A DNA stretch of 64,000 nucleotides, from NCBI GenBank assembly GCA_033442325.1, contig JAWQFM010000002.1, positions 1,534,076 to 1,598,075 of the forward strand, written 5' to 3'. A model generated the notes under the pieces. It did no database searches and was not told the origin of the DNA. It saw nothing but the letters and a program-made list of their open reading frames with translations. Shown one piece after another: positions 789 to 58,050 of this stretch. Made by a program: the position numbers and the translations under genes. The first letter of the stretch is position 1. Every line of letters begins with the position of its first letter. The stretch is from Salpingoeca rosetta. Lineage: Eukaryota; Protista; Choanoflagellata.

Positions 789-1124
789 CACACACACACA
801 GACAGACAGACAGACACACACACACACGCAGACACACACACAGACACAAGCAGGTGCGATACAGGTGTGATCGCACCATTTTCCTTCTCCCAGATGACGC
901 GGGCGTTTGTCGAGGAGGCGAACTGCCTCGTGGTACGCCGTGTCTGCATTCGCCGCGGCAGCCTGGTGGTAATGGTGATGATGGTTAACTTGATGGATGC
1001 ATTTGATCGAGATTTTGATGTCATNNNNNNNNNNNNNNNNNNNNNNNNNNNNNNNNNNNNNNNNNNNNNNNNNNNNNNNNNNNNNNNNNNNNNNNNNNNN
1101 NNNNNNNNNNNNNNNNNNNNNNNN

Positions 1125-2950: not shown

Positions 2951-3253
2951 GATTGCTGATAGCTGAAGTGTGTCAGGGTATCAGCCACAAGGACGCACGC
3001 GCGCGAGCGAGACGAGGATTAAATGCACGGGAGCTCGTTGGTTCGATTGCCTGGCTCTTGCCTTCGGTCAGTGTTTCCTTGTTCCAAACAAGACGTGCGA
3101 GTGTGTGCTTCCATGTCAGACAAGATTGCATCAACAAAGCAAGCACATGATGTACGGTATTCACAAAACAACCGGGAACGTCACGCACTTTGCAACCAAC
3201 CACCCTTCCCTCAACTCCTTGCCCTCTCAGGTTGTGTGGGGATGGATGCAAAG

Positions 3254-3291
<38 letters not shown>

Positions 3292-3441
3292 AACAGCAGA
3301 CGGGAGCGAGCGACTTCGCATTCACACACACATCACTGCGTCCACCACCACACCTTCACAAACAAACCAAACACACACCTCCTCTTTTGCAGACACAGGT
3401 TGGAAGTGCACATTTTATGCTGTCGTGCCCCGACACCCAAT

Positions 3442-4484
3442 ATGGATGCGTCTTCACCGCCACAAACTGCGACGGCGTCACGGGTGGTGGTGACGTATGA
3501 GGACGCGTCGCTGTTTGCGTCTGATGTGGCGCTGCTGGAACCCGGACAGTGGCTGAACGACGCCATTTTCACATTCGCGTTTGAGTACTTTCGACACGGG
3601 CATGCCGAGACCAGGGCAAGGAGCAAGAGCGGCGATGTCGTGTTCGTGGATCCCAGCTCCCTGCAGCTGCTCTTCGCCATGGACGCCGCCTCTGCACGTG
3701 TGGCGCTGCTGGAACCGATTGGGGCAGCCCAGGCCAAGGTCCTCGTCATCCCTGTCAACGATGCCGTCAGTGATGCGCGGCAACCAAACGCTGGCACGCA
3801 TTGGGCCCTGCTGGCAGTGGACACGGAGCAGAGCCGTGCCCTTTACCTCGATTCCATGCCTTCGGCCAGCATGCGCGACCAAGTGGTGACGCCACTCCTG
3901 ACCAGGCTGTCAGCGGCGCTCGGCACGCACAAACGCCTCACGCTGCTGCAGCCGCCATTCCCGAGACAGGCAAATAGCTTTGACTGCGGCATGTACGCAT
4001 TGGCAGCAGCCGAGCATGTTGCTGTCACTGGCCTCAATCCTGAACCTTCCTTCGATTTCTTATCACCAGCCTTCATCTCCGAGCTGCGGCAGCGATGGAA
4101 GGTGTGCATGCGTGTCGTGTGCGTGTGTGTACATGTGAGTGTAGTTGTGTATGTGAGTGAGTGAGTGAGTGTAGTTGTGTATGTGAGTGTGCGAGTGAGT
4201 GAGTGAGTGAGTGAGTGAGTGAGTGAGTGAGTGAGTGAGTGAGTGAGTGAGTGAGTGTAGTTGTGTGTGTGTGTAAGTGAGTGAGTGAGTGAGTGTGTGT
4301 GAGTGAGTGAGTGAGTGAGTGAGTGAGTGAGTGAGTGAGTGAGTGAGTGAGTGAGTGAGTGTGGTGTACATGTGAGTGCACGCACTCACACGTGTGTATG
4401 TGTGCGTTCGTTTCGACATCTTGCTTGTGTTGCCCCCAGGCAATCATCACGGAGACAGCTACGCCTGACAACGGACATAGCTGA
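3442..4484 (+). CDS. SENP8: NEDD8-specific protease SENP8/DEN1/NEDP1 (peptidase C48); exons 3442-4101 and 4440-4484
   Basis: VVVTYEDASLFASDVALLEPGQWLNDAIFTFAFEYF, PVND...AGTHWALL (catalytic His), YLDS, QANSFDCGMY (catalytic Cys). A GT-AG intron leads to a short terminal exon AIITETATPDNGHS*. Confidence 0.9.
4153..4360 (+). repeat. (TGAG)n tetranucleotide microsatellite in SENP8 intron
   Basis: Long, lightly interrupted gagtgagtga array. Confidence 0.95.
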
Positions 4485-5144
4485 TATTAGCTCGAATTGG
4501 CTCTGCCCCTTGCTATTGAGCTCCTTTCCTTGTAATGTAACTGACCCTTGCTTGACTGCCGACATGTGTGCATGTGGTGCGCCCACAGACTGCTCTTTTG
4601 CGCGCATGTTAGTGCCCGCTGCAATGTGCCGTGAGTTGCGCTGCAGCGTGCTGATTGATGTTGTGCATGTCATATGCCTTCGCTGGCGAAGAGAGTAGTT
4701 GTACAAACGCTGTCACTTGTGAGGCCGAGTCAAAATACAATACATTGTATGTGTATTTCGTCTGCAGCACTGCCGGACTTGGGCGGAGGTGCTGTGCAAG
4801 TACATCTTGCGATTGGCAACGGCCGAGGCAGGAGCCAAGAGAGAAAGGAGGGGCGAGCAGGAAGGGTCAATACATGCAAGGGGAGCAACAATTAAACGAA
4901 TGAAACTGCTCACACGGCACACAAAGTGCAGGCCAGAACAAGGTGTGGCACAACAAGAGGGGCAACAGGAGCAGAGGGATCAGCGACATACAGAGGGCTA
5001 GAGAGGCACAGAGGAACAGAGGGAACAAAGAGAGAGAGAGAGAGAGAGAACGCGCACTCAGAGACACACACACACACACAGATAGACAGACAGACACACA
5101 GACACATGCACGCACACGCAGACACAAACAGACACACACGCGCG

Positions 5145-5177
<33 letters not shown>

Positions 5178-5333
5178 GCACGCACACACACACATACAGA
5201 AACAGATACACACAGACACACGCACACACACACACAGACAGAAACAGATACACACACAGACACATGCACACACGCAGACACACACAGACACACACAGACA
5301 CACACAGACACACACAAACATGCACACGTGCAG

Positions 5334-5705
5334 TTATCTGTTGGAGCGCAGCATGGCCATGAGGGTGGTGACAAAGACGGCAATGGTCAATAGGTAGACG
5401 GGTGCGAGGATGGCGGTGGTTGGTCCTGAAATGTGGCCGTCCGCATGCAGCGGGAGCACCACGTCCACGGCGATCTTCGCTGCGAGCGCGACGATCCTTA
5501 CGAGCCCGTCCTTCCAGGGCGGTCGTGGCCGCTGGCGCACGTACAGCACGAACAGGATGGCCAGGGACAGGTCTTGGATGTACAAGGGCACGCACACGCC
5601 GATCCAGGAGCCAATCAATCCTTTCTGCGACGCCAACACCGCTGCAACCAGCACCAGCAGCAACTCCACCACCACTGTCGCCAACCCCACCCCTTTGCCC
5701 AGCAT
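5334..5705 (-). CDS. Small multi-pass membrane protein, TMEM203/TMEM60/TMEM185-like (123 aa, single exon)
   Basis: About four hydrophobic segments. [32 protein letters not shown]...[11 protein letters not shown]...ILAPVYLL resembles the SW..VF.P...D and K...E.LL...PL pattern of TMEM203 as recalled. Confidence 0.55.
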
Positions 5706-5954
5706 CTCTGCAAGTAGCTGGTTGTCCTTGCGAGCTTCACGATCCCCAGCAACAGCCGCGGCAAGAAAAAAGAGGCTGTGTGGTGTTGTCGGCGTTCAAG
5801 CGTCCCTCAGCCTTTGACACGCTCTCCAACTCCTCTGCCTTCCTTTCCTCTCCTTTCGTTCACTCTCCACACACAAAAATCCACACAAGCAGCAAAGCCA
5901 AGAGACACTGTGCGCGCAACACAGGAAAGACAAGAAGAAGAAGGTGGCGTCACG

Positions 5955-7028
5955 ATGACGGACTTGGCTGCAGCTTCCTCCTCCTCCTCTGCCTCTGCGC
6001 GAGGTGTGGTGGACGTTGGGGACGTGGCGTTACAGGAGCAGGTGCAGGCGACGTTTGTGGACACCCTCCAGGCCAGCATCGATCAAGACACAAACCTGTG
6101 AGCACTGTGGTCCATTTGCACTCGAAAGCTTGGTTGCTCGCTGCTTGTTTGCACCTCCACTCTTGTCCATGGGCTCAACTTGCAGCACACGCTTCGTCGC
6201 GCGTTCACCTCAGCCCCTCCCCTCCCCCTCTTCCTCCTCGTCTTTACATAGGGCACCGGTTGTGATCCAGTTTGAGGTGGGCGATAGGGTGTGGCACATT
6301 GACACGCGCAGCGAAAGTACACCACTGGTTTCCGCCACGCGTCATGCCGAGCCAGGTGTGCATGGCAACGCGACAGGATCATGTGTGCATGTGTGCATGT
6401 GTGCATGTGTGCGTGCGTGCGCGTGTGTATATGTGTATGGGCCGTGGTCTGCGTTGCCTGCTACGTGCCCCAAGCCTGTGTGTCACAGCTACATTTGCCA
6501 ACACACATACACACATGCACTTACACTCACTCACACACCCACACCCACAACCACACACACTCACACACTCGCGAACATCCACACGCACACAACAAATACA
6601 CATACGCACGCACACACATATGCATGCGTACACAGACGCCACGCTGCGATGCAACTTTGACACTCTCAAGGCCATCAGCCAAGGAAAGCTCAAGGTCCCT
6701 GTTGCCATCCTTCGCAACCGCATTCAACTCGAAGGCAGTCGCCAGGTGCGAGCACCATGGATGCCTGATGTCATGCACTTCATGGGATACCCTCTGCACT
6801 TTCCTTGCTCGCCCAGCGAGTCTGACAATGCTGCGCACTGCCCTTTGTTCCCCGTGAGGCGTGCTCGTGCACTACCGCTCGTCTCGTCCTCCCTCACATG
6901 ATTGTTGTGCCCCCCCCCCCGTATTGCTGCCACAACAGGTGGTGATGGGTTACGGTCGCCACGTGCGGCAGGCGTTCCAAGCATGCAAGCCCATCGTTAC
7001 TGGCCAAGTGCCGCTCGCTGCACAGCCA

Positions 7029-7059
<31 letters not shown>

Positions 7060-7904
7060 CACAGCAGCAGAGAGTGCGTGCAGGCAGCACGGCGTCACAG
7101 GCGCGCGCCATGCTGGGAATGGATCGCGGGTTTCGCATGGAGCAGTATCTCGCCAAGACTTGGGTATGTGCATCGTGCGATGTCCTCTGTGGTCCTCTGT
7201 GGTGATGTGTGGTCCTCTGTAGTCCTCTGTGGTCCTCTGTGGTGGTCTGTGGCGTGGAACACGAACAGCCGCTATGACACTGTGATGTGTTCAGCATCGA
7301 TCTGTACGCATGCATCTGCTTGTTACATCAAGAGTGCCTCAAGCCTCTGAATACATGCGATCACGTTTTCACACGCACACACACAGTGCCACATTCAAGC
7401 ACGCGTTTGACTCGCTGACGCTCACTTCCGTTCTGTCACTCCCTCCCTCTCCCTTCCATTCTGTCCCTGTCTCCTTGTCCCCCGGCCACATGCACACGCA
7501 GGTGCCCGACGATGAGCGGTCGACGTGCCTGGAGTGCAAGCAGTCGTTTTCGTTCTTCCGCCGCCGCCACCACTGCCGCGTGTGCGGTGAAGTTTTCTGT
7601 GGAGATTGCTCAAACTTTTACATCATGGACTACCGCGTGTGCGGGCCGTGCCAGCAGAAGGTGCTGGAGGCGCAGCGCACCTACCACTCGCTCATCACAG
7701 ACACGCCGTCCCACACGCCGCCACGCTCGCGCTCAACAACAACAACAACAGCACGGCAGCGGGGTTCCCGCCAGACCACCGCCAGCAACGTCACCCCACC
7801 ACGAGCAGCAGCGCCAGGGCAGCACGCGTCATCTGCTCCCCCGTCCTCATCGTCGCTTTCAGCCTCACTCTCTGCACGCCTGCAAGAGGCCCAATCACAG
7901 CAGC

Positions 7905-7935
<31 letters not shown>

Positions 7936-10900
7936 GCAACAACAGCAGCAGCAGCAACAACAGCAACAAGGGCAGCGGCGACGGGGAAGGGCACAGGGGC
8001 GAGCTGCTGGCACAGCTGAAGCGCGTGCACCAGCAGCAGCCACCATGACAGAAGAACAGCCACAGGCCACCTCGTCATCATCATCGTCGTCGTCGTCACA
8101 GCAAGAGGGGCAAGAGAGAAGTGGGCTTGGCCTGCTGGAAGGGAAGCTGTCTGCTCGCATTCGCAGCATGGAGGAGCGACCTGTCGATGCAAAGACGGCA
8201 GTGGAAACAGCGGCCGCAGTGGCCCGTGCACACCTGAATGAAGGCATTCATCGTGATGGTACCGGCAGTGCTGATACACCGTCTGCGTCCTCGTCGCTTC
8301 GCTCCTCACCAACGCCGTCATCATCGTCGTCGTCGTCATGGCTCTCGTGTTCCCTAGTCTCGTTCTTCGTCCTCTCGGTGGGTATCAGTGTATGAGTGTA
8401 TGGGTATGCGTGTGTGTACATGTGCGTGTGTGTGTGTGCATGTGTGCATGAGTGTATGTGTTTGTGCATGTGTTGTGTACTACATACGTTTGAGTGTCGC
8501 ATGCTGGTTGTGATGCTGTACGCGCATGTACACATTTGCAGTGGGGGTATGCGTGTCGCCTCCACCAGCCAACATGCTGACATCGTCCAACTCATGTCAA
8601 CCCAACTCTTCCTTCCGTTTCCGATGCCCCCCACTGTATCTTCCTTTCTTGCCTGCTTGTTAGGTTGGGGTGGTCGCTGGTGTTTTGTCTACCTACGCCA
8701 TCGACATGCCAGCACTTCCGTCCTCCCTGCCATCCCTGCCATCCCTTCCAACGCAGCAAGAAGCGCTGGACATGGCGTCCGAGACCGGACACGCTGTCCT
8801 CAATGCCGCGACCGCTTCTCGCGCATGGCAGTTCATGATGCAATATCCCTTGTACATTGCCGGCACCGCATGCGGGCTGGTGCTCCTGGGCGTGCTGAAC
8901 AGACGCCGCCTTGCTCTCCTTCGTCGCCAGGCCGTGGTCTACTATACATCCACCGTTGTCATCTCCCGCATCCTGCTGCTGAAATACTGGTCAAAGTACT
9001 TTCCAGTCTCCGAGGAAGTGGAGGAGGAGCAGTGGAACCGTCTCCACGAAGCAAACGCACGCCGCGTCCAGGTATGCTTGTGTGTTTGTGCGCGTGTGTT
9101 TGCGCGCGTGTGTTTGTGCGTTCTTGTGTTTGTGCATCAGCGTGTTTGCGTGTGTGTACATGCTCGTGCTGACGTGTTGTGATCCAACTGCGTGCGAATC
9201 CAAACACGTGCTTTCCAGTGGCTGCCTATCTTGCCGCTTTCTCACATCATCATGCTCTCCTCCTCCTCCTCCTCACCACCACCACCTCCTCCTCCTCCTC
9301 CTCACCACCACCACCACCACCACCACCACCACCACCATCAACCAGCTGCTGGCGCGGCGGCTGCGCGGGTTTTGGGTGAAGGTGGGGCAGTACCTGTCCT
9401 CACGCGGCGATGTGATGCCGGAGCCCTGGGTCCGCGAGCTTCGCTCCCTCCAGGTCTTGCAGATGCACACACGCGTGCATGCATGCATGCATGATGCTCG
9501 TGCGAGGTGGCAATGGAGGATTGATAGGTTTTTTTTTGAAGGGGGGGGGGAGGCGAGGGAGCGAGGGTGCAATTGTATGTATGCGTGTGTATGCGTGTGT
9601 ATGTGCATGCGGGTTCTTGATGTACCTGTCATGCGTGCGGATTCCACCTCCTCAACATTGGCTTCAACAGCACCTCGTTTGCATTTCGATCCTTTCATTC
9701 CCATCCGTCGTCACATCACCTCACACCCGTTTCCTTATCATGCCAACACCTCACCCTGCCTCCCCCCTATTCCTGTTTCAACCACCTTCCACCTCTCTTC
9801 CTCTCTTCGACTGCAGGACACGATGCCGTTCCAGCCGTTTGCGGACGTGAAAGCGATTGTGGAGGAGGATCTTGGCCACCCGCTCACAGAGCTCTTCTCC
9901 TCGTTTGAAGAACTCCCAATTGCATCAGCAAGTATCGCGCAGGTGCACATTGCCACACTCAAGCGCAGCAAGCACCAGGTGCGTGCATTTGCCTGCGTAT
10001 GCGTGCGCGTGTGTGTGCCATCGTTGAGGCTTGTGTAGCTGCAGGTGGCTCTGATGAAGGCATGTATCATGTGTTCCTGTCACTCTGTTTCGTTGATGTC
10101 GTGGAGGAGGGGGGGGGGTGTTCAACGCTCATCCACACGTCCACACATCCACACCTGTGTCCTGTCGTGCAGGTGGTGGTGAAAGTGCAGCACAAAAACA
10201 TTGACCGCATCATGAAGCAGGACCTCAAGAATCTCTTTGTCATCGTCTCATGGTGTGGTGCTGTGCGATACTGTGTGTGTCTAAGTGTGCGTATCTGTGT
10301 GTGTCTCTCTGTGTGTGTGTGTGTCCGTGTGTGTGTGTGTGTGTCTGTGTGTTTGTGCGTGTGTGTGTGTGATTACTTGTCACCCTTTTCGACTTGACCC
10401 TTCGGTCTCATCGACCTTCTTCCCCCTCCCCAACCCGAACAAACAGGGTGGCGTATCTTGAGCCGCAGTATGATTTTCGGCCTGTGCTGGAGGAGTGGGC
10501 CAAGGTCGCCATCAAGGAGCTCGACTTCAAACACGAGGCCGCAAACATGCAGCGTGTGCGCAACAATCTCCTCAAAACGCATTTAGATGTCATTGTGCCC
10601 AAACTGGAGGAGGGCCTCTTCTCCAACCGCGTGATTGTGATGGAGTACTGCGAGGGCTTCAAGGTGACGGACACGGATCTTCTTGACGCGCACGACATTG
10701 ACCGCGAATCGCTCATGCGTCGCATCTGCCAAGCATATGCGCACCAAGTGTATGTTGACGGCTTCTTCAACTGCGATCCGCATCCAGGTATGGTCGCCGG
10801 TGCTGTACTGCTGGTCCTGACGGAGGTGTCGTGTGGTATGCAGCGAACACGGCGCTCTTCTGCGTTTTGCACAACGTTGTTTCGTTCGTTGTGCTTGGTT

Positions 10901-13900
10901 GATTGCTGTCGTGCGTGCGCGCGTGCTCGGGTGTTTACACGCGTGTATCCTGTTGTCTATACCAGTTGGTCAGACCTCACTCCTTCATCTCACTCCTCAG
11001 TATCACTCCTTCACCTCACTCCTTCACCTTACTCCTCAACCTCATTCCTTCACCTCACTCCTTACATTCGTTCCCCCTCCCCCTACTTCCCTTAACACAT
11101 TCACCCCTACCATATCTCGTCGCCCACATTCAACGTGCTTGCAGGCAACATCCTGGTCCAGGTGCGCGACGGCAAGGCGTACCCGGTGCTGCTTGACTAC
11201 GGCATGTGCCGGCAGCTGCCCGAGGAGAAGAAGCGGGCCTTTGCCGCCATGATCTACGCAGCGACCACCATGGACTTTGGCACGCTGCTGTGGAGTTTTG
11301 ACGAGATGGGCCTGAAACTGAAGCGGGACGACCCGTTTGAGGACATGAAGAACATTCGCTTTGTGCTGCGTGACACAGCGCCTGGCGCAGAGATGCGCAG
11401 AGACTTCAAGAAGTTTCGCGAGGACGTGTGGCAGAAGCGCCAGCAGCTGCCGCGCAGCCAGCGAAACCCGGTCGAGGCGTGGCCGCCGGAGCTGCTGTTC
11501 TTCTTCCGCGTGACCCTGCTTCTGCGTGGCCTGTGCGCTGTGCTTGGCGTGCGCATGCGCTACTCGCTCGTGCTGGCCCCATACGCCCACCTCGCCCTCA
11601 TCCGATCCTACAACCGCTCCCTGCACGCCACGCACGCCGTCACCGCTGCGCCCATCCACACCGACACCAGTCAAGACACAACCGCCACGAACACCACCAC
11701 CGCAGGCGGTGTGCCACCATCATCGCCACCGCCGTCGGCGCCACTGTCGCGCGTGCGGCTGGTGCGCATGGCTGCCAGTCCGCAGCGAGCGGTGATGGAG
11801 GTGCTGCAGGAGCTGTACAGCGAGGGCCTCATCACAGGCATCCAGGTTGCCGCCTACCACCAAGGACAGTGCGTCGTGAACGCATGTGCGGGGACAATGG
11901 GAGCGGCGGACCCGCGGGCCGTCACGCCGAGCACGCTCTTCAACTGCTTCTCCGTGATGAAGGGCGTGACGGCGACGGCGCTGCACGTGCTCGCCGACCA
12001 GCGGCTTCTGCAGTACAGCGATCGCGTTGGTGCACACTGGCCCGAGTACGCGTGCAACGGCAAGGAGGAGACGACCATCTACAACGTGCTTACCCACTCT
12101 GCTGGGCTGCACCGCTTCCCCGGCCTCAAGCTGAACCTGAAGCAGGTGTGCGACTGGCACACGATGCAGAAGCACATACAGGAGGCGGCAGCAGAGACAC
12201 CACCAGGCACGCTCGCCCGCTACCACATCCTGTCGTTTGGGTGGATTGTTGCCGGCATCATTGAGCGGGTGACGCGCGGGCAGCCGTTCAGCGAATTCCT
12301 TCGTCAGCGCATCGCTGCTCCGCTCGGCATTGAGGTGTGTGGTGGTGGACAGGTGGAGAGAGAAGTTGGTCGGGGCTGCGAGTGTGTGGTTGCAATCGGC
12401 GTGTACGTGTGTGTGCATGACTGTGTTGCAACCACAGCGTGTGCTTGTTTTGGGTTGTCTGTATGTATTGCATTGGGTAAACCACGCGTGTGGCGGGAAG
12501 ATGTTGACACGTGTGTGTGTGTGTTTGATATCGCGCGTCTTGCACTCATCTGCGTGCCTGACCCTCATCTGCGTGTGCTGCTGTGCACTGGTGATGGTTG
12601 TGCCAGGACGAGTTTATGATTGGCGTCGACATGGATGATGAGCGCATCTGCGACCGACTCGCCACACTCTGCAACGGGTGCGACTGTTTTTGCTGTTATT
12701 TGCATGGGATACAGTCGTGTGTTGTGTTGCAGTCTTTGGGGATGGTGCACAGGTTTTGGTGTCGGGTTGCTGGTTCCCATTGCGGCTCCTCGTCTTTCCC
12801 ACGCCGTACCTAACAACATGTCTCGCACATCACCACCACCACCACCACGATCACGACGATCAACTGCCACGATCACCTCCACGACACCACGACACCACCT
12901 CCATGTTCACAACACCACGACTACCAACAACAGGTTCTTTGCGACGGAGGATGGCGAGCCACCGAGCGAGGAGGACGTGAAGCGGCTGCTGGCACAGCTG
13001 CGGCGCGCCGACCTGCCACAGCAGCGCCACGAGACGCCAGGGGCGGGCGATGTCGTGCTGGTGAACGGAACAACAAGGAGCGGGCGGCGTGTGCCCACCG
13101 TTGCGCACGTGAGTGGTGAAGACGCAGAAGACGCACAAGAGGTAGAGGAGGAGGGTGCTGGTGATGCTGAAGGCGCGGCAGGAGGGGAGAAGCATGAGGA
13201 CGAAGCAGAAGAACAGCGCGACGGCGATGAGGATGAGGATGAGGATGAGGATGAGGAGGAAGAGGATGAGGAGGAGGATGAGGAGGAAGAGGACACGAGT
13301 GCTGTTGCAGCATCGGTACCACGCCACCCAGATGCGTGGCCGCCTGTTCTCAACCAGCAGCCGCACCGCTACGACGCGCTTGTGGAGAAGACGCGTACGG
13401 AGGTGATGAAGGAAATGGACAGCACAACAGACGGATGGGGCCTTGTCAAGACGTCATCAGACGTTGAGATCTGGAAGAAAAAGGTGGGTTACAATGTGTG
13501 TGTGTGTGTGTGTGTGTGCGTGTGTGTGTGTGTGTGGCAATGTGTGTGTGGCAATGTGTGTGTGTGTGGGGGGGGGGGCAATGCGTGTGTGTGTGTGTCA
13601 ATGTGAATGTGTGTGCGAGTGAGTCTCATGGACACGGTTCATTGTCGACACTCGATCCCTCATTCTTCCCGCCCTCATCCTGCAATGTTCCCATTGTCAC
13701 ACCTGTCTTTAGATCCAGGACAGCCCGTTGGTGATGGTTCGGGGCGTGGGCGTGATTGAGCGCCACCCAGCCGTTCTCTTCAAGATTCTGACGCAGGTGG
13801 ACCAGAAGCCGCTGTGGAACAAGGACTTTGCCTGCCTGGACGAGGTTGAAGTGTTTGATGACTGCACAAAGGTTCGTGTTGCGTCTGCATACGTGTATTT

Positions 13901-14335
13901 TGCGTATGTGAGCTGGTGTGGAAGAATGTGTGTTTGTATATGAATCTGTGAATGTATTGTGGATGTGTTGTGCAGGTGTGCAGCATGCCTCTGCACGGGC
14001 TGACGCGAGACTGCGATGCGTGTGGTGTGCTTCAGGTGATCCGTGATGAGTACAAGCCCATCTGGCCGGTCTCTGGGCGCGACATGTGCTTCGTGCAGTC
14101 CCTTCGTCTCCTGGACAACGGCGGCTTCTTCATGGTCAGCAAGAGCGTCGAGCACCCAGACTGCCCGCCCAAATCGGGGTGAGTCGTGCGAGAGGCGGTG
14201 TGGTGTGGAACATATGTGGAACATGTGTGTTTTGGTGTGTGTGCGTGTGCCGTGCCGTTATGCACGCATGTGTGGTTGAGGAGAGGCTCGTCAACAATAT
14301 GTGGTGATCTTACCACTTTCCTTGCGCACTCCCCT

Positions 14336-14391
<56 letters not shown>

Positions 14392-15038
14392 CTCACACAC
14401 TCTCTCATGCGCGTGTGGAAACCCAACATGTCTGTCAGTGTTGTGCGAGCGGAGGGTTTGGGTGGCATGCGCGTTGTGCCCTTCCCCAACGATCCCAACA
14501 AGTGCACCGTCACATACCTCACTGCTGTCGACCCAAAGGTGTGTGTCGGGTGTGTGTGCATTGTACGTGTTTTCATGTTTTGTGTGTGTGTGTGTGTTTT
14601 GCTTAGTGTGTGTGTTTGTGCGTGTTTGTGCGTGTGCGTGTGTGTGTTTGTGCGTGTGTGTGTTTGTGCGTGTGTGTGTTTGTGCGTTGTGTTTGTTAGT
14701 TTGATTTCAAGTTGCATTTGGATTTTGATACTTTAATCACATCAGGCACCTATCTTCCTCACTTTCCCCCACAATACCATCCTTGTCCCTCCCACGCACA
14801 CATGCAAACACAACTTGGCAGGGCAATGTTCCGACGATGGTGGTCAACGTCGTTGCGACCAACCAGCCGCTGTGTGTGGCGGCGATTCGCAAGCTTGCCA
14901 TGTCGCGCCCACAGTACACGCCGCCGCCAGAGCCAACCCCGCCACCAACTCCACAGCAGAAGAAGAGAGCACCACGCAAGCAGGGAAGCAAGCAGGCACT
15001 GAAGAAGACGAAAGCCAGGAAGCAGCAGACGACGGGGA

Positions 15039-15069
<31 letters not shown>

Positions 15070-15402
15070 GAAGGCGCAGAAGAGAGGTGCCGTGAAAGAA
15101 GCTAGTAACCACGCAGCAGCAGCAGCAGCACGCACACGATCAGGGAATGAGCAAGCATCAGCTGTGCCTGCTGCCACTACACATCAACAGCAACAAGCAG
15201 AACAACCAGAAGACGAGGAATTGGACGCCAGCAAGATGATTCTGCTGGACCCGTGCATGTACAACACACGACAGGTGGGTTGGCGTTAGCGTTGGCGTTG
15301 GCGTTGGCGCACTGACACGCGAGACGCCTGCATCTGCATTACACTTGCTCATGCACGAAATGACACAATTGATCCGACCGCCATTGCAAGCTGCTTGATG
15401 TT

Positions 15403-15475
<73 letters not shown>

Positions 15476-15713
15476 CAGTTGCGGCAAGCGGTGATCCCCT
15501 CAGCCAACGGCCACTTCTCTGCGCGTGCGCTTGCCAAGTTCTACGCCGTGCTCGCCAACAACGGCCGACTTGGGTCGTTTCAACTGCTGCAGCCAGAGAC
15601 TGTTGCCACCATGTCAAAGGTTCGCTTGCTTATTGTGTGCATGGAACTCCTGCACGGTACAGAAATGGTGGCGTTGTTGTATCCACCACCCTGTCGGCCT
15701 TACACACGTGCTT

Positions 15714-15779
<66 letters not shown>

Positions 15780-16379
15780 CTGTAAATGAATGAGTGCGAA
15801 TGTGATCGGTGTGTGTGCGTGCGTGTGTGTGTGTGTGAAAATCAGAGTGTCTCACGACGCATTCCTGATGCTTTTTTTGTGTTTCGATTCCCTGAACAGA
15901 CGCAGCCCATTGAGACGCCGTTCATGCAAGGCATGCGCGTGCGCTGGGGTCTTGGCTACCAAAAGTACAGGTACGTGTATGTATATGTGTGTGTGTATGA
16001 TTGTACGTCTTTGGCTTTGTTACTGTTGCGTTTGTTTTGTTGCTGTGTTCATCCTGTGGTTGACCTGCTTCCTTCCTTTTGTTCCCCTTCCATTTGCGCT
16101 TGTCGCGACTTTATCTGCGCCACCTCACACCACCCCTCCTCCCTTCTCTACAACGCTGCAATCCCTCATCTTCTCCACAGGATGAAGCGGGACGGGCGTG
16201 TGTTGGACACGCCGTTTGGCCACGTCGGGCTTGGCGGCAGTGCAGCGTTTTGCGATCCACACACCAACACGTCCTTTGCCATTACCGTGAATCGTTTGCA
16301 GCTGGATAAGGAGGTTGCCGAGCGTGTCCTTGACGCCATCACGGATGCGTTGCAGATTGGCCAAGTCGACCTCATGTGA
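5955..16379 (+). CDS. Multidomain protein: SCP2 - FYVE - TM - ABC1/UbiB (ADCK/ABC1K) kinase - beta-lactamase-fold serine hydrolase split by a START domain; 20 exons, ~1,877 aa
   Basis: Exons: 5955-6097, 6252-6355, 6636-6745, 6939-7163, 7502-8377, 8664-9071, 9346-9453, 9817-9978, 10173-10252, 10447-10787, 11145-12334, 12607-12677, 12934-13483, 13713-13871, 14036-14178, 14439-14538, 14822-15274, 15479-15619, 15900-15970, 16181-16379. All introns are GT-AG with compatible phases and the total is 5,634 nt. Domain motifs are given in the sub-features. Confidence 0.85.
6030..6990 (+). other. SCP2 (sterol carrier protein 2)-like lipid-binding domain
   Basis: [14 protein letters not shown]...[37 protein letters not shown] fits the SCP2 consensus (W.iD...pD.ti......f..l..Gkl....A....klki.G). 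Confidence 0.75.
7155..7665 (+). other. FYVE zinc finger (PI3P-binding)
   Basis: W|VPD (WxxD), [26 protein letters not shown]. All three FYVE signature motifs and eight Cys are present. Confidence 0.95.
9030..11600 (+). other. ABC1/UbiB/ADCK atypical protein kinase-like domain
   Basis: KVGQ (KxGQ), LQD, A-rich loop [46 protein letters not shown]. Confidence 0.95.
11780..12677 (+). other. Beta-lactamase-related serine hydrolase (class C / family VIII esterase fold), N-terminal part
   Basis: [23 protein letters not shown] (SxxK at 11951-11962), [33 protein letters not shown] (catalytic Tyr ~12221), IAAPLGI. Lies in the same exon as the end of the kinase. Confidence 0.92.
13370..14900 (+). other. 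START (StAR-related lipid transfer) domain
   Basis: [88 protein letters not shown]: a complete START consensus. Confidence 0.93.
15240..16379 (+). other. Beta-lactamase-related serine hydrolase, C-terminal part
   Basis: [54 protein letters not shown]...FAITVN. Confidence 0.9.
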
Positions 16380-16931
16380 TGTGTGCGTATGTTGTGTGTA
16401 TGTCGTGTGTGTGTGTGTGTCGTGTGTGTGCATGTGAGTGTGGTGTGTGCATGTGTGTACGTGTGTGTTGTGCGTGGCATGTGTGTGTTGTGCGTGCACG
16501 TGAGTGTGCGTGGCATGAAGTGTGGGCGTGCACACCAACCTGTGTTCCTCATCTCTCATTCGTAGATTCGATGCACATTTAGAGCACCCGTTTTCAAAAG
16601 TTTGCTGTGTTGCATTGCCAATAAAACAACATCAAATTCATCTTGCCAATTTTTTATTTGCCAACGCGCACAGTCCGCGCTTTCTGACCACGCTGCCACA
16701 CAACCACACACAACAACTCGACGACGACCGCATGCACTGGCCGCTGCATCCCCCTCCACAACAAGCAGCACATTCGCTCACTCAACCGGTCTCTCGACGA
16801 GCCGGAGACAGCAACGGCTGCAACAGCTACAACAGCTGCAGTATCTGCAGCAACATCCTGAGCGGCAAAAGCGCCATTTCCCAAGGCGCAGACACAAGCC
16901 ACAAGCAAAACCTGTGACGGCCAAGGCATTC

Positions 16932-25815
<8,884 letters not shown>

Positions 25816-54207: not shown

Positions 54208-58050
<3,843 letters not shown>

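What the first reader, a model, noticed from the sequence alone, without database searches (positions are those of the whole stretch)
5955..16379. Single-chain lipid-processing machine: SCP2 + FYVE + TM + ABC1/UbiB kinase + serine hydrolase + START
Seen: 20 exons join with 19 canonical phase-compatible introns into ~1,877 aa. Critical junctions fall inside conserved elements: WxxD of the FYVE is split by an intron, a TM helix (SFFVLS|VGVVAG) spans exons 5-6, and the kinase end and hydrolase start share one exon. This argues for one gene rather than a run of neighbours. Established: UbiB/ABC1 kinases act in prenyl-lipid/quinone metabolism at membranes, and an ABC1K-beta-lactamase fusion is known in plants (ABC1K11 type). 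I know of no description of that core carrying three lipid-binding domains. Inference: a membrane-anchored, PI3P-targeted enzyme that extracts (kinase/ATPase), carries (SCP2, START) and hydrolyses (esterase) lipids, perhaps bacterial prey lipids in food vacuoles or bacterial lipid cues. The SCP2 + UbiB pairing echoes bacterial UbiJ (SCP2) + UbiB.
Basis: partly seen in the sequence, partly recalled or inferred. Interest (0 to 1): 0.92.

Follow-up and report, generated by a model that had tools for sequence, protein, structure and literature searches.

The report
Endosome-targeted UbiB kinase–esterase lipid enzyme
One 20-exon choanoflagellate gene really does encode a 1,877-residue membrane protein that joins a UbiB-type ATPase/kinase and an esterase to three lipid-binding modules; the family exists unnamed in several protists' sequence data, no searchable paper describes it, and it may show how cells move greasy lipids such as quinones at endosomes.

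Summary
I rebuilt the same model: 20 exons, 19 GT-AG introns, 1,877 codons, 5955-16379 (+). It is collinear end to end with single-transcript ORFs of two other choanoflagellates.

One correction. START is not C-terminal. It is inserted inside the esterase (beta-lactamase-fold) domain, at a loop that is 10-100 residues long in START-less relatives.

All catalytic and binding motifs are intact:
- UbiB: KxGQ, Ala-rich loop, K716, D849, D870.
- Esterase: S1122-x-x-K1125, Y1212.
- FYVE: WxxD, RRHHCR, RVC.

The protein is not unique. An SCP2-FYVE/PX-two-helix anchor-ABC1-esterase core occurs in other holozoans, a raphidophyte, a haptophyte and a prasinophyte. FYVE and PX, both PI3P binders, swap at the same position. 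The nested START appears only in choanoflagellates and a few unnamed environmental sequences. No searchable paper describes the architecture.

Function is inferred: a PI3P-targeted, cytosol-facing machine that extracts, carries and de-esterifies a hydrophobic lipid.

Verdict: a real gene and a new variant of the known ABC1-esterase fusions. Moderate to high interest.

The parts
5955..6097 (+). Exon 1: start codon and N-terminal helix of the SCP2 domain (aa 1-47)
   Evidence: First ATG of the open frame. Aligns with the N-terminus of P0001.
6252..6355 (+). Exon 2: SCP2 beta strands (VIQFEVG...)
   Evidence: A custom SCP2 HMM hits model aa 49-121.
6636..6745 (+). Exon 3: SCP2 (DATLRCNF...LEGSRQ)
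6939..7163 (+). Exon 4: end of SCP2, a Q-rich linker, and W194 of the FYVE WxxD motif as its last codon
7502..8377 (+). Exon 5: FYVE zinc finger (VPDD, RRHHCR, RVC, four CxxC), a poly-Q/S/T linker, and the first half of hydrophobic helix 1
   Evidence: Pfam FYVE E 1.2e-13. Motifs.
8664..9071 (+). Exon 6: second half of helix 1, a short loop, hydrophobic helix 2 (aa 546-565), and the N-terminal helices of the UbiB domain
   Evidence: Intron 5 (8378-8663) contains 8405-8463, which were not sent to any search tool.
9346..9453 (+). Exon 7: UbiB KxGQ motif (K634, Q637)
9817..9978 (+). Exon 8: ABC1 Ala-rich nucleotide loop (ASASIAQVH)
   Evidence: Pfam ABC1 E 8.5e-15.
10173..10252 (+). Exon 9: catalytic Lys K716 (VVKVQH)
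10447..10787 (+). Exon 10: ABC1 core with E769, the catalytic loop D849 and N854
   Evidence: Pfam ABC1 E 3.2e-27.
11145..12334 (+). Exon 11: end of the ABC1 domain (D870 in LLDYG), a linker, and the first half of the family VIII esterase with S1122-x-x-K1125 and Y1212
   Evidence: Pfam Beta-lactamase E 5e-39 and the ABC1 tail on one open frame. Best solved relatives are family VIII carboxylesterases.
12607..12677 (+). Exon 12: the last esterase element before the insertion (DEFMIGV...ATLCNG)
   Evidence: tblastn to P0001 1111-1135
12934..13483 (+). Exon 13: acidic disordered linker and the first helix and strand of START
   Evidence: The ortholog's linker is predicted disordered.
13713..13871 (+). 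Exon 14: START
   Evidence: Pfam START profile 43-85, weak when scanned alone. tblastn E 7e-8.
14036..14178 (+). Exon 15: START
   Evidence: Pfam START E 6e-5, 22.9 bits against a cut-off of 22, from this exon alone
14439..14538 (+). Exon 16: START
14822..15274 (+). Exon 17: C-terminal helix of START, a basic/Q-rich disordered linker, and re-entry into the esterase ([11 protein letters not shown])
15479..15619 (+). Exon 18: esterase second half ([17 protein letters not shown])
   Evidence: tblastn 75% identity to P0001
15900..15970 (+). Exon 19: esterase (RWGLGYQKY)
16181..16379 (+). Exon 20: esterase third motif (FGHVGLGGS), conserved C-terminus and stop codon
   Evidence: Pfam Beta-lactamase profile 280-319. 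The C-terminus aligns with the ends of P0001 and P0003.

Best explanation
**Shown.** This is one single-copy nuclear gene of a choanoflagellate, very probably Salpingoeca rosetta. It encodes 1,877 residues in this order:
- SCP2 lipid-carrier domain;
- a canonical PI3P-type FYVE finger;
- a long disordered linker;
- two hydrophobic helices;
- a UbiB/ABC1 atypical kinase/ATPase domain with every catalytic residue kept;
- a family VIII (class-C beta-lactamase-fold) serine esterase with its Ser-Lys-Tyr set kept;
- a START lipid-binding domain, placed inside the esterase and flanked by two long disordered linkers. It sits at a loop that is variable in the family.

The protein belongs to a protist-wide subfamily, SCP2 - FYVE or PX - anchor - ABC1 - esterase. 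Choanoflagellates added the START.

**Inferred.**
1. FYVE (PX in relatives) places the protein on PI3P-positive endosomal or phagosomal membranes.
2. The two-helix hairpin leaves both flanks in the cytosol.
3. The UbiB domain uses ATP to lift a very hydrophobic lipid out of the bilayer. By analogy with COQ8, Cqd1/2 and UbiB, this would be a prenylated quinone or a similar neutral lipid.
4. SCP2 and START shield or present that lipid, or sense it.
5. The esterase cleaves or transfers an acyl ester on it.

My confidence is about 0.93 for the gene and its architecture, about 0.6 for PI3P-membrane targeting, and about 0.35 for the extract-carry-hydrolyse scheme.
For: **Gene model and copy number**
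- Model built.
- It is collinear with single Trinity transcripts of S. infusionum and D. costata marked 'type:complete'.
- The same domain set is seen by Pfam in P0001: SCP2 34.6 bits, FYVE 53.3, ABC1 231, Beta-lactamase 191.8 in two stretches, START 72.5.
- Window ORFs themselves hit FYVE, ABC1, Beta-lactamase and START.
- It is single copy in a 55.4 Mb genome.
- Eight RNA-like runs from two studies hold 0.48-0.51 of the sampled words of 6380-16379. A fully spliced mRNA of this model would give 0.486, and DNA-like runs give about 0.95.

**Structure of the orthologue (AlphaFold2)**
- The two esterase halves form one fold like family VIII carboxylesterases 5gmx, 8j5v and 5gkv (TM by target 0.80-0.82).
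- START resembles STARD4 (0.90).
- Both flanking linkers are disordered.
- The UbiB domain resembles COQ8A (0.75) and SCP2 resembles human SCP2/SCP-2L (0.63-0.71).

**Conserved residues**
All invariant family residues are kept in the window protein.

**Insertion site**
The loop is 10-100 aa long in 63 START-less relatives and 339-693 aa in 5 START-bearing ones.

**PI3P targeting**
- FYVE has all three signature motifs.
- PX replaces FYVE at the same position in P0020, P0035 and P0142.
- Two hydrophobic segments between FYVE/PX and ABC1 are present in most relatives examined.

**UbiB function**
- COQ8 is an ATPase activated by membranes and by quinone-like phenols.
- Cqd1 and Cqd2 set the cellular distribution of CoQ.
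- Bacterial UbiB works alongside the SCP2 protein UbiJ.
Against:
- The species' own annotated protein was not found in any protein search.
- SCP2 in the window itself rests on a custom HMM (E 5e-5) and on the orthologue, because the exon pieces are too short for Pfam.
- The second hydrophobic helix is marginal (Kyte-Doolittle 1.49), so the topology is a prediction.
- No substrate, localisation or activity is known for any member of this subfamily.
- Some plant ABC1K proteins are reported to be true protein kinases (abstract of PMC8956952 as listed; the paper itself was not read), so lipid extraction is not the only possible output.
- Docking of START on the esterase could not be tested.
Confidence: 0.6

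Rival explanations
1. The locus is two or three separate genes wrongly joined: SCP2-FYVE, then ABC1-esterase, then START.
For: Retaining intron 5 gives a stop at 8393-8395. I have no junction reads for this species. No annotated full-length protein of this species was found.
Against: - Single transcripts in two other choanoflagellates carry the same order from the first to the last residue.
- SCP2-FYVE-ABC1-esterase is also one ORF in Chattonella and in several environmental contigs.
- The esterase fold is complete only if exons on both sides of START are joined.
- A hydrophobic helix and the WxxD motif are each split by an intron.
- RNA-like runs hold the word share expected from the whole spliced model.
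Confidence: 0.04
2. It is one gene, but the ABC1 domain is a regulatory protein kinase rather than a lipid-extracting ATPase. SCP2 and START act as lipid sensors that switch the kinase or the esterase on at endosomes, as the START domain of Them1/ACOT11 allosterically tunes its thioesterase.
For: - A plant ABC1K is reported as a Mn2+-dependent protein kinase (listed).
- Them1 has a START domain that allosterically regulates its hydrolase.
- ACOT11 START is among the structural matches of this START.
- START is tethered by long flexible linkers.
Against: COQ8 shows ATPase activity stimulated by lipids and quinone-like phenols. UbiB relatives affect lipid distribution. No protein substrate is known for this subfamily. 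The two readings are not mutually exclusive.
Confidence: 0.2
3. The beta-lactamase-fold domain is a peptidase (LACTB-like, or a DD-peptidase acting on prey peptidoglycan fragments) rather than a lipid esterase. On this view the lipid-binding domains serve only for membrane targeting.
For: The Pfam family PF00144 also contains DD-peptidases and D-amino-acid amidases. These appear as weaker matches, with E 1e-7 to 1e-4.
Against: The best sequence matches (E 2e-22 to 2e-12) and the best fold matches are all family VIII carboxylesterases. With a two-helix hairpin the domain would face the cytosol, not the phagosome lumen. A nested START suggests a lipid ligand.
Confidence: 0.08

Closest known systems
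COQ8A/ADCK3, yeast Coq8, Cqd1 and Cqd2, bacterial UbiB (UbiB/ABC1 atypical kinase family)
   Same: It has the same domain, with the KxGQ motif, Ala-rich loop, catalytic Lys/Glu/Asp/Asn/Asp and a predicted COQ8A-like fold. It is membrane-anchored just N-terminal of the domain.
   Different: The known members are mitochondrial or bacterial single-domain proteins. This one has no presequence. It carries a PI3P-binding FYVE finger and is fused to SCP2, an esterase and START.
   Same: They share the ABC1 domain followed by a PF00144 esterase in one chain. Examples are Calypogeia, Closterium, Chlorokybus, Mesostigma, Neospora and Hammondia.
   Different: - In the members I scanned with my own domain HMMs, no SCP2, FYVE/PX or START was found.
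- In the tree the streptophyte proteins lie in the other half of the family, though that split is weakly supported.
- I found no functional study, and the name ABC1K11 could not be verified.
Family VIII carboxylesterases (for example PDB 5gmx, 8j5v, 7y3z, EstA 3zyt/5gkv)
   Same: These are the best sequence and fold matches. The S-x-x-K and Tyr nucleophile set is kept, and the fold is complete once the two halves are joined.
   Different: They are free-standing bacterial enzymes of about 370-400 aa. Here the fold is interrupted by about 450 residues (linker, START, linker). By the alignment ranges to AmpC-type chains, the interruption lies roughly at the Omega-loop region; this mapping is approximate.
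Them1/ACOT11 (thioesterase plus START)
   Same: A lipid-metabolising hydrolase is joined to a START domain. In Them1 the START senses fatty acids and lysophosphatidylcholine and tunes the enzyme. ACOT11 START is a structural match of this START.
   Different: Them1 uses HotDog-fold thioesterase domains with START at the C-terminus. Here START is nested inside a beta-lactamase-fold esterase.
Bacterial UbiJ/UbiT (SCP2) with UbiB, and Coq10/RatA (START-like quinone binders)
   Same: The same three domain kinds, UbiB, SCP2 and a START-type pocket, cooperate as separate proteins in ubiquinone biosynthesis and shuttling.
   Different: Here they sit in one chain and are predicted to be at endosomes, with an esterase added. 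No link to quinones has been shown.

Membership tests
UbiB/ABC1 atypical kinase family (PF03109) | ABC1 domain match above the Pfam gathering score | tested here: met
   Window exon 8 scores 55 bits and exon 10 scores 95.7 bits, against a cut-off of 22.9. The orthologue P0001 scores 231 bits.
UbiB/ABC1 atypical kinase family (PF03109) | KxGQ motif, Ala-rich loop, and catalytic Lys, Glu, Asp, Asn and Mg-binding Asp | tested here: met
   K634, Q637, A696-S697, K716, E769, D849, N854 and D870 are all kept at columns that are invariant or at least 90% conserved in 48 relatives.
UbiB/ABC1 atypical kinase family (PF03109) | COQ8A-like fold | tested here: met
   The AlphaFold2 model of the orthologue P0001:1-863 matches COQ8A with TM by target 0.74-0.75. 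The window protein itself was not folded.
UbiB/ABC1 atypical kinase family (PF03109) | ATPase or kinase activity and a role in prenyl-quinone handling | not testable with these tools
   This needs biochemistry and lipidomics.
Family VIII carboxylesterase / PF00144 beta-lactamase fold | Domain match above the gathering score | tested here: met
   Exon 11 scores 134.8 bits against a cut-off of 27, over profile positions 6-186. Exon 20 covers profile 280-319.
Family VIII carboxylesterase / PF00144 beta-lactamase fold | S-x-x-K nucleophile motif and catalytic Tyr | tested here: met
   S1122-V-M-K1125 and Y1212 align with the STTK motif and the Tyr of 5gmx.
Family VIII carboxylesterase / PF00144 beta-lactamase fold | Third active-site motif (W/H/K-x-G) on the C-terminal beta strand | tested here: inconclusive
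   FGH-V-G-LGG is present, and the Gly columns are at least 90% conserved. I did not align it residue by residue to a solved esterase.
Family VIII carboxylesterase / PF00144 beta-lactamase fold | Complete fold and esterase activity | tested here: inconclusive
   The fold is complete in the orthologue model, with TM 0.80-0.82 to 5gmx, 8j5v and 5gkv across the insert. Activity is not testable here.
START domain (PF01852) | Domain match and helix-grip fold | tested here: met
   Exon 15 alone scores 22.9 bits against a cut-off of 22. The orthologue scores 72.5 bits. The model matches STARD4 with TM 0.90. The ligand is unknown.
FYVE zinc finger (PF01363), PI3P-binding type | Eight Zn-binding Cys plus the WxxD, R(R/K)HHCR and RVC motifs | tested here: met
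   Pfam 51.4 bits. W194-VPD, RRHHCR at 215-220, RVC at 239-241 and four CxxC pairs are present. PI3P binding itself is not testable here.
SCP2 sterol-carrier domain (PF02036) | Domain match and alpha/beta SCP2 fold | tested here: met
   - The window exons are too short for Pfam and gave no hit.
- An HMM built from Pfam-verified SCP2 segments of non-choanoflagellate relatives hits model aa 49-121 with E 5e-5.
- The orthologue scores 34.6 bits against a cut-off of 21.3.
- Its model matches human SCP2/SCP-2L with TM 0.63-0.71.
Plant-type ABC1K-beta-lactamase proteins ('ABC1K11 type') | Orthology with the streptophyte ABC1-esterase proteins | tested here: inconclusive
   In a 98-row tree all 19 proteins with N-terminal modules, the window among them, fall in one 62-row half. 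The streptophyte, chytrid and red-alga proteins fall in the other. The split has only 64% SH-aLRT support. No sequence named ABC1K11 was available.

The most novel reading that the evidence does not exclude
The chain is a 'Rosetta-stone' fusion. It would show that UbiB-type ATPases hand extracted isoprenoid quinones, or similar neutral lipids, directly to SCP2 (UbiJ-like) and START (Coq10-like) carrier domains. It would also show that many protists run such a machine outside mitochondria, on PI3P-marked endosomes or phagosomes. There an attached esterase would release the lipid from an acyl-ester storage or prey-derived form. That would give an experimental handle on the open question of how CoQ-type lipids reach and leave non-mitochondrial membranes.
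Probability: 0.15. Interest if true: 0.85.

Novelty: new variant of a known kind. Interest (0 to 1): 0.56.

Why it matters
UbiB/ABC1 proteins are ancient and linked to disease, yet their mechanism is still unclear. The leading idea, ATP-driven extraction of quinone-type lipids from membranes, remains hypothetical.

A natural fusion places a UbiB domain in one chain with two lipid-carrier folds, an esterase and a PI3P address. That predicts partners, substrates and a location that can be tested in a genetically tractable choanoflagellate.

The FYVE-for-PX swap across lineages is independent comparative evidence that endosomal targeting is part of the family's function. The START domain nested in a beta-lactamase fold is a structurally unusual arrangement that I did not find described.

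If the gene turns out to act on something else, it is still an uncharacterised, widely distributed protist enzyme family.

Tried and rejected
- **Read laying.** I sent window:7100-13099 with four runs. No junction reads were obtained. After that, no letters of 8405-8463 were sent to any search tool, and the Rfam scans were run beside them (5000-8404 and 8464-16700).
- **Complex prediction.** I submitted the esterase halves plus START of the orthologue. The job was not folded because of a tool rule, so there is no verdict.
- **The species' own annotated protein.** It was not found by the exhaustive representative search (best hit 61% identity) or by three word-indexed searches covering lengths 218-693, 440-1402 and 906-2884 aa. 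I cannot say how the public annotation models this locus.
- **Literature.** No paper combined ABC1/UbiB with FYVE, SCP2, START or a beta-lactamase domain in the relevant sense. The Toxoplasma paper that held three of the terms concerns unrelated proteins.
- **Earlier findings near this place or by domain words.** None.
- **Rfam.** No RNA family in or around the gene.
- **Pfam on short SCP2 exons and exon 6.** Nothing.
- **Rejected readings.** The downstream 1,752-codon ORF (SNF2-related) is not part of this gene, because the stop and C-terminus are conserved with the orthologues. Antisense ORFs inside exon 11 are a by-product of GC-rich coding sequence.
Full report
**Observation**

The plus strand between 5955 and 16379 is a mosaic of open segments separated by TG/CA-microsatellite-rich spacers. 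I enumerated frame-compatible GT-AG pairs and used tblastn of two relatives as a guide. This gave a model of 20 exons, 19 introns and 5,634 coding bases, or 1,877 codons. All introns are GT...YAG and 154-363 bases long.

- W194 of WxxD ends exon 4.
- The helix SFFVLS|VGVVAG spans intron 5 (8378-8663).
- Exon 11 carries both the ABC1 tail and the first half of the hydrolase on one uninterrupted frame.

Pfam scans of the window's own open frames gave FYVE (E 1.2e-13), ABC1 (8.5e-15 and 3.2e-27), Beta-lactamase (5e-39) and, from exon 15 alone, START (6e-5, just above the curated cut-off).

**One gene or several**

An exhaustive HMMER search with exon 11 found 13,435 relatives. The best is a 1,648-residue ORF from a Salpingoeca infusionum transcript marked 'type:complete'. 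Next among the long hits is a 1,559-residue ORF from a Didymoeca costata transcript.

Pfam finds SCP2, FYVE, ABC1, Beta-lactamase (in two stretches) and START in the first, and all but SCP2 in the second. My model aligns with both from the first block to the last residue, with 47% and 40% identity. Single mRNAs with this order therefore exist in two other choanoflagellates.

The gene is single copy in a 55.4 Mb, 68-contig genome. Earlier notes of this scan call that genome S. rosetta. Its size and its nearest relative fit, but I did not prove the identification.

For this species I have only indirect RNA evidence. Eight RNA-like runs from two studies hold 0.48-0.51 of the sampled 31-letter words of 6380-16379. 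DNA-like runs hold about 0.95, and a fully spliced transcript of my model would hold 0.486.

**Correction: START is nested**

Along the DNA, the beta-lactamase profile runs 6-186 in exon 11. It continues in exon 12, is interrupted, and resumes in exons 17-20 (profile 280-319 in exon 20). START occupies exons 13-17 in between.

An AlphaFold2 model of the orthologous region (P0001:915-1648, 68-row alignment) has mean pLDDT 81 and pTM 0.68. It gives a confident esterase built from both halves, a confident START, and two disordered linkers.

Foldseek aligns the whole esterase, across the insert, to family VIII carboxylesterases 5gmx, 8j5v and 5gkv (TM by target 0.80-0.82). It aligns START to STARD4 (0.90), STARD10, CERT and ACOT11.

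In 63 START-less relatives the same loop is 10-100 residues long. In the five START-bearing ones it is 339-693 residues. By the alignment ranges to AmpC-type chains the site lies roughly at the Omega-loop region next to the active site. That mapping is approximate.

**Are the parts intact**

Every column that is invariant or at least 90% conserved in 48 ABC1 relatives and 68 esterase relatives is kept in the window protein:
- UbiB: K634/Q637 (KxGQ), the Ala-rich loop, K716, E769, D849, N854, D870.
- Esterase: S1122, K1125, Y1212 and the glycines of FGHVGLGG.

FYVE has WxxD, RRHHCR, RVC and four CxxC pairs.

A model of P0001:1-863 (pLDDT 81) matches COQ8A (TM 0.75) and human SCP2/SCP-2L (0.63-0.71).

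SCP2 in the window itself is supported by an HMM built only from Pfam-verified, non-choanoflagellate segments (E 5e-5, aa 49-121).

Two hydrophobic segments lie between FYVE and ABC1, at aa 471-504 (Kyte-Doolittle 2.24) and 543-565 (1.49). Comparable segments are present in most relatives examined. A hairpin would keep both flanks in the cytosol. FYVE (PI3P) and the ATP-using UbiB domain both need that.

**Family context**

Of about 160 ABC1-esterase proteins fetched, 34 carry extra modules (identities):
- **SCP2+FYVE:** Chattonella and several environmental clusters.
- **SCP2+PX:** the Chrysochromulina cluster and P0035.
- **PX alone:** P0020.
- **FYVE alone:** Cymbomonas, Corallochytrium, Chromosphaera and others.
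- **PH:** P0136, which has ABC1 but no detected esterase, so it lies outside this tally.
- **START, always nested:** four choanoflagellates (the window, S. infusionum, D. costata, Choanoeca flexa) and four unnamed sequences, one of which has two STARTs.

FYVE and PX both bind PI3P (established knowledge). Their interchange at one position is comparative evidence for endosomal targeting.

In a 98-row tree of the ABC1-to-esterase region, all 19 proteins with N-terminal modules fall in one half. The streptophyte, chytrid and red-alga 'core-only' proteins fall in the other. The window groups with S. infusionum and Didymoeca (99%), near Corallochytrium and Chromosphaera. The deep split has only 64% support. 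Many 'core-only' rows in the first half are N-terminally truncated fragments.

**Mechanism (inference)**

COQ8 is an ATPase activated by membranes and by quinone-like phenols. Cqd1 and Cqd2 reciprocally set cellular CoQ distribution through their kinase/ATPase domains. Bacterial UbiB is proposed to extract prenylated intermediates and works alongside the SCP2 protein UbiJ. Coq10/RatA are START-type quinone binders. Them1 shows that a START domain can tune an attached hydrolase.

The most economical reading is a PI3P-addressed, cytosol-facing machine. UbiB lifts a hydrophobic lipid from the endosomal or phagosomal bilayer. SCP2 and START hold or sense it. The esterase removes or transfers an acyl group.

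Which lipid is involved is not known, and neither is whether prey or bacterial lipids play a part. Rival readings, in descending likelihood, are a regulatory protein kinase with lipid-sensor domains, a peptidase role for the beta-lactamase fold, and a mis-joined locus.

**Novelty**

ABC1-esterase fusions are already in databases, some under names such as 'ABC1 family beta-lactamase'. The SCP2-FYVE/PX version is present but unnamed in several protists. The architecture is therefore not unseen.

I found no paper describing it, the PI3P module, or a START nested in a beta-lactamase fold. The library covers open-access papers only. I rate it a new variant of a known kind.

**Surroundings**

Upstream there is a Ulp1-type C48 peptidase ORF at 3190-4164 (+). 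About 220 bases downstream there is a 1,752-codon ORF ending in an SNF2-related domain. Neither is related to this gene. No Rfam family lies in or beside the gene.

Noticed in passing
window 16602-21860 (+): A 1,752-codon uninterrupted ORF starts only about 220 bases after the stop of this gene. Its C-terminal end opens an SNF2-related helicase domain (aa 1584-1687), which presumably continues in later exons. It is a separate gene.
   Followed up: partly
window 3190-4164 (+): An upstream ORF has a Ulp1/SENP-type C48 peptidase domain (Pfam E 4e-13).
   Followed up: partly
window 6380-6620, 8396-8470, 9085-9160, 10285-10370, 13490-13600, 14330-14390, 14560-14700, 15400-15470, 15740-15830: Most introns of this gene carry long TG/CA dinucleotide microsatellites. 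One of them (8405-8463) tripped the reads tool's filter.
   Followed up: no
P0152 (1,324 aa, ENA contig) and P0225 (1,095 aa): These are environmental relatives. P0152 has two START domains in tandem inside the esterase loop, and both have PDZ domains listed at the N-terminus. They may be real variants or gene-calling artefacts.
   Followed up: no
P0020, P0035, P0142/P0182 (Chrysochromulina), P0136: In relatives the FYVE position is occupied by a PX domain (three clusters) or a PH domain (one). This looks like a recurrent swap of phosphoinositide-binding modules in front of the same ABC1 domain (ABC1-esterase core in the PX cases; no esterase was detected in the PH case, P0136).
   Followed up: partly
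P0076 (Homolaphlyctis polyrhiza, 1,814 aa): A chytrid ABC1-esterase protein carries about 900 N-terminal residues with HYDIN/CFAP65/Cep192-type Ig-like (ASH) domains. This is an unrelated N-terminal elaboration, or a fused gene model.
   Followed up: no
window 1025-1124 and 57726-57825: Two 100-base runs of N (assembly gaps).
   Followed up: no
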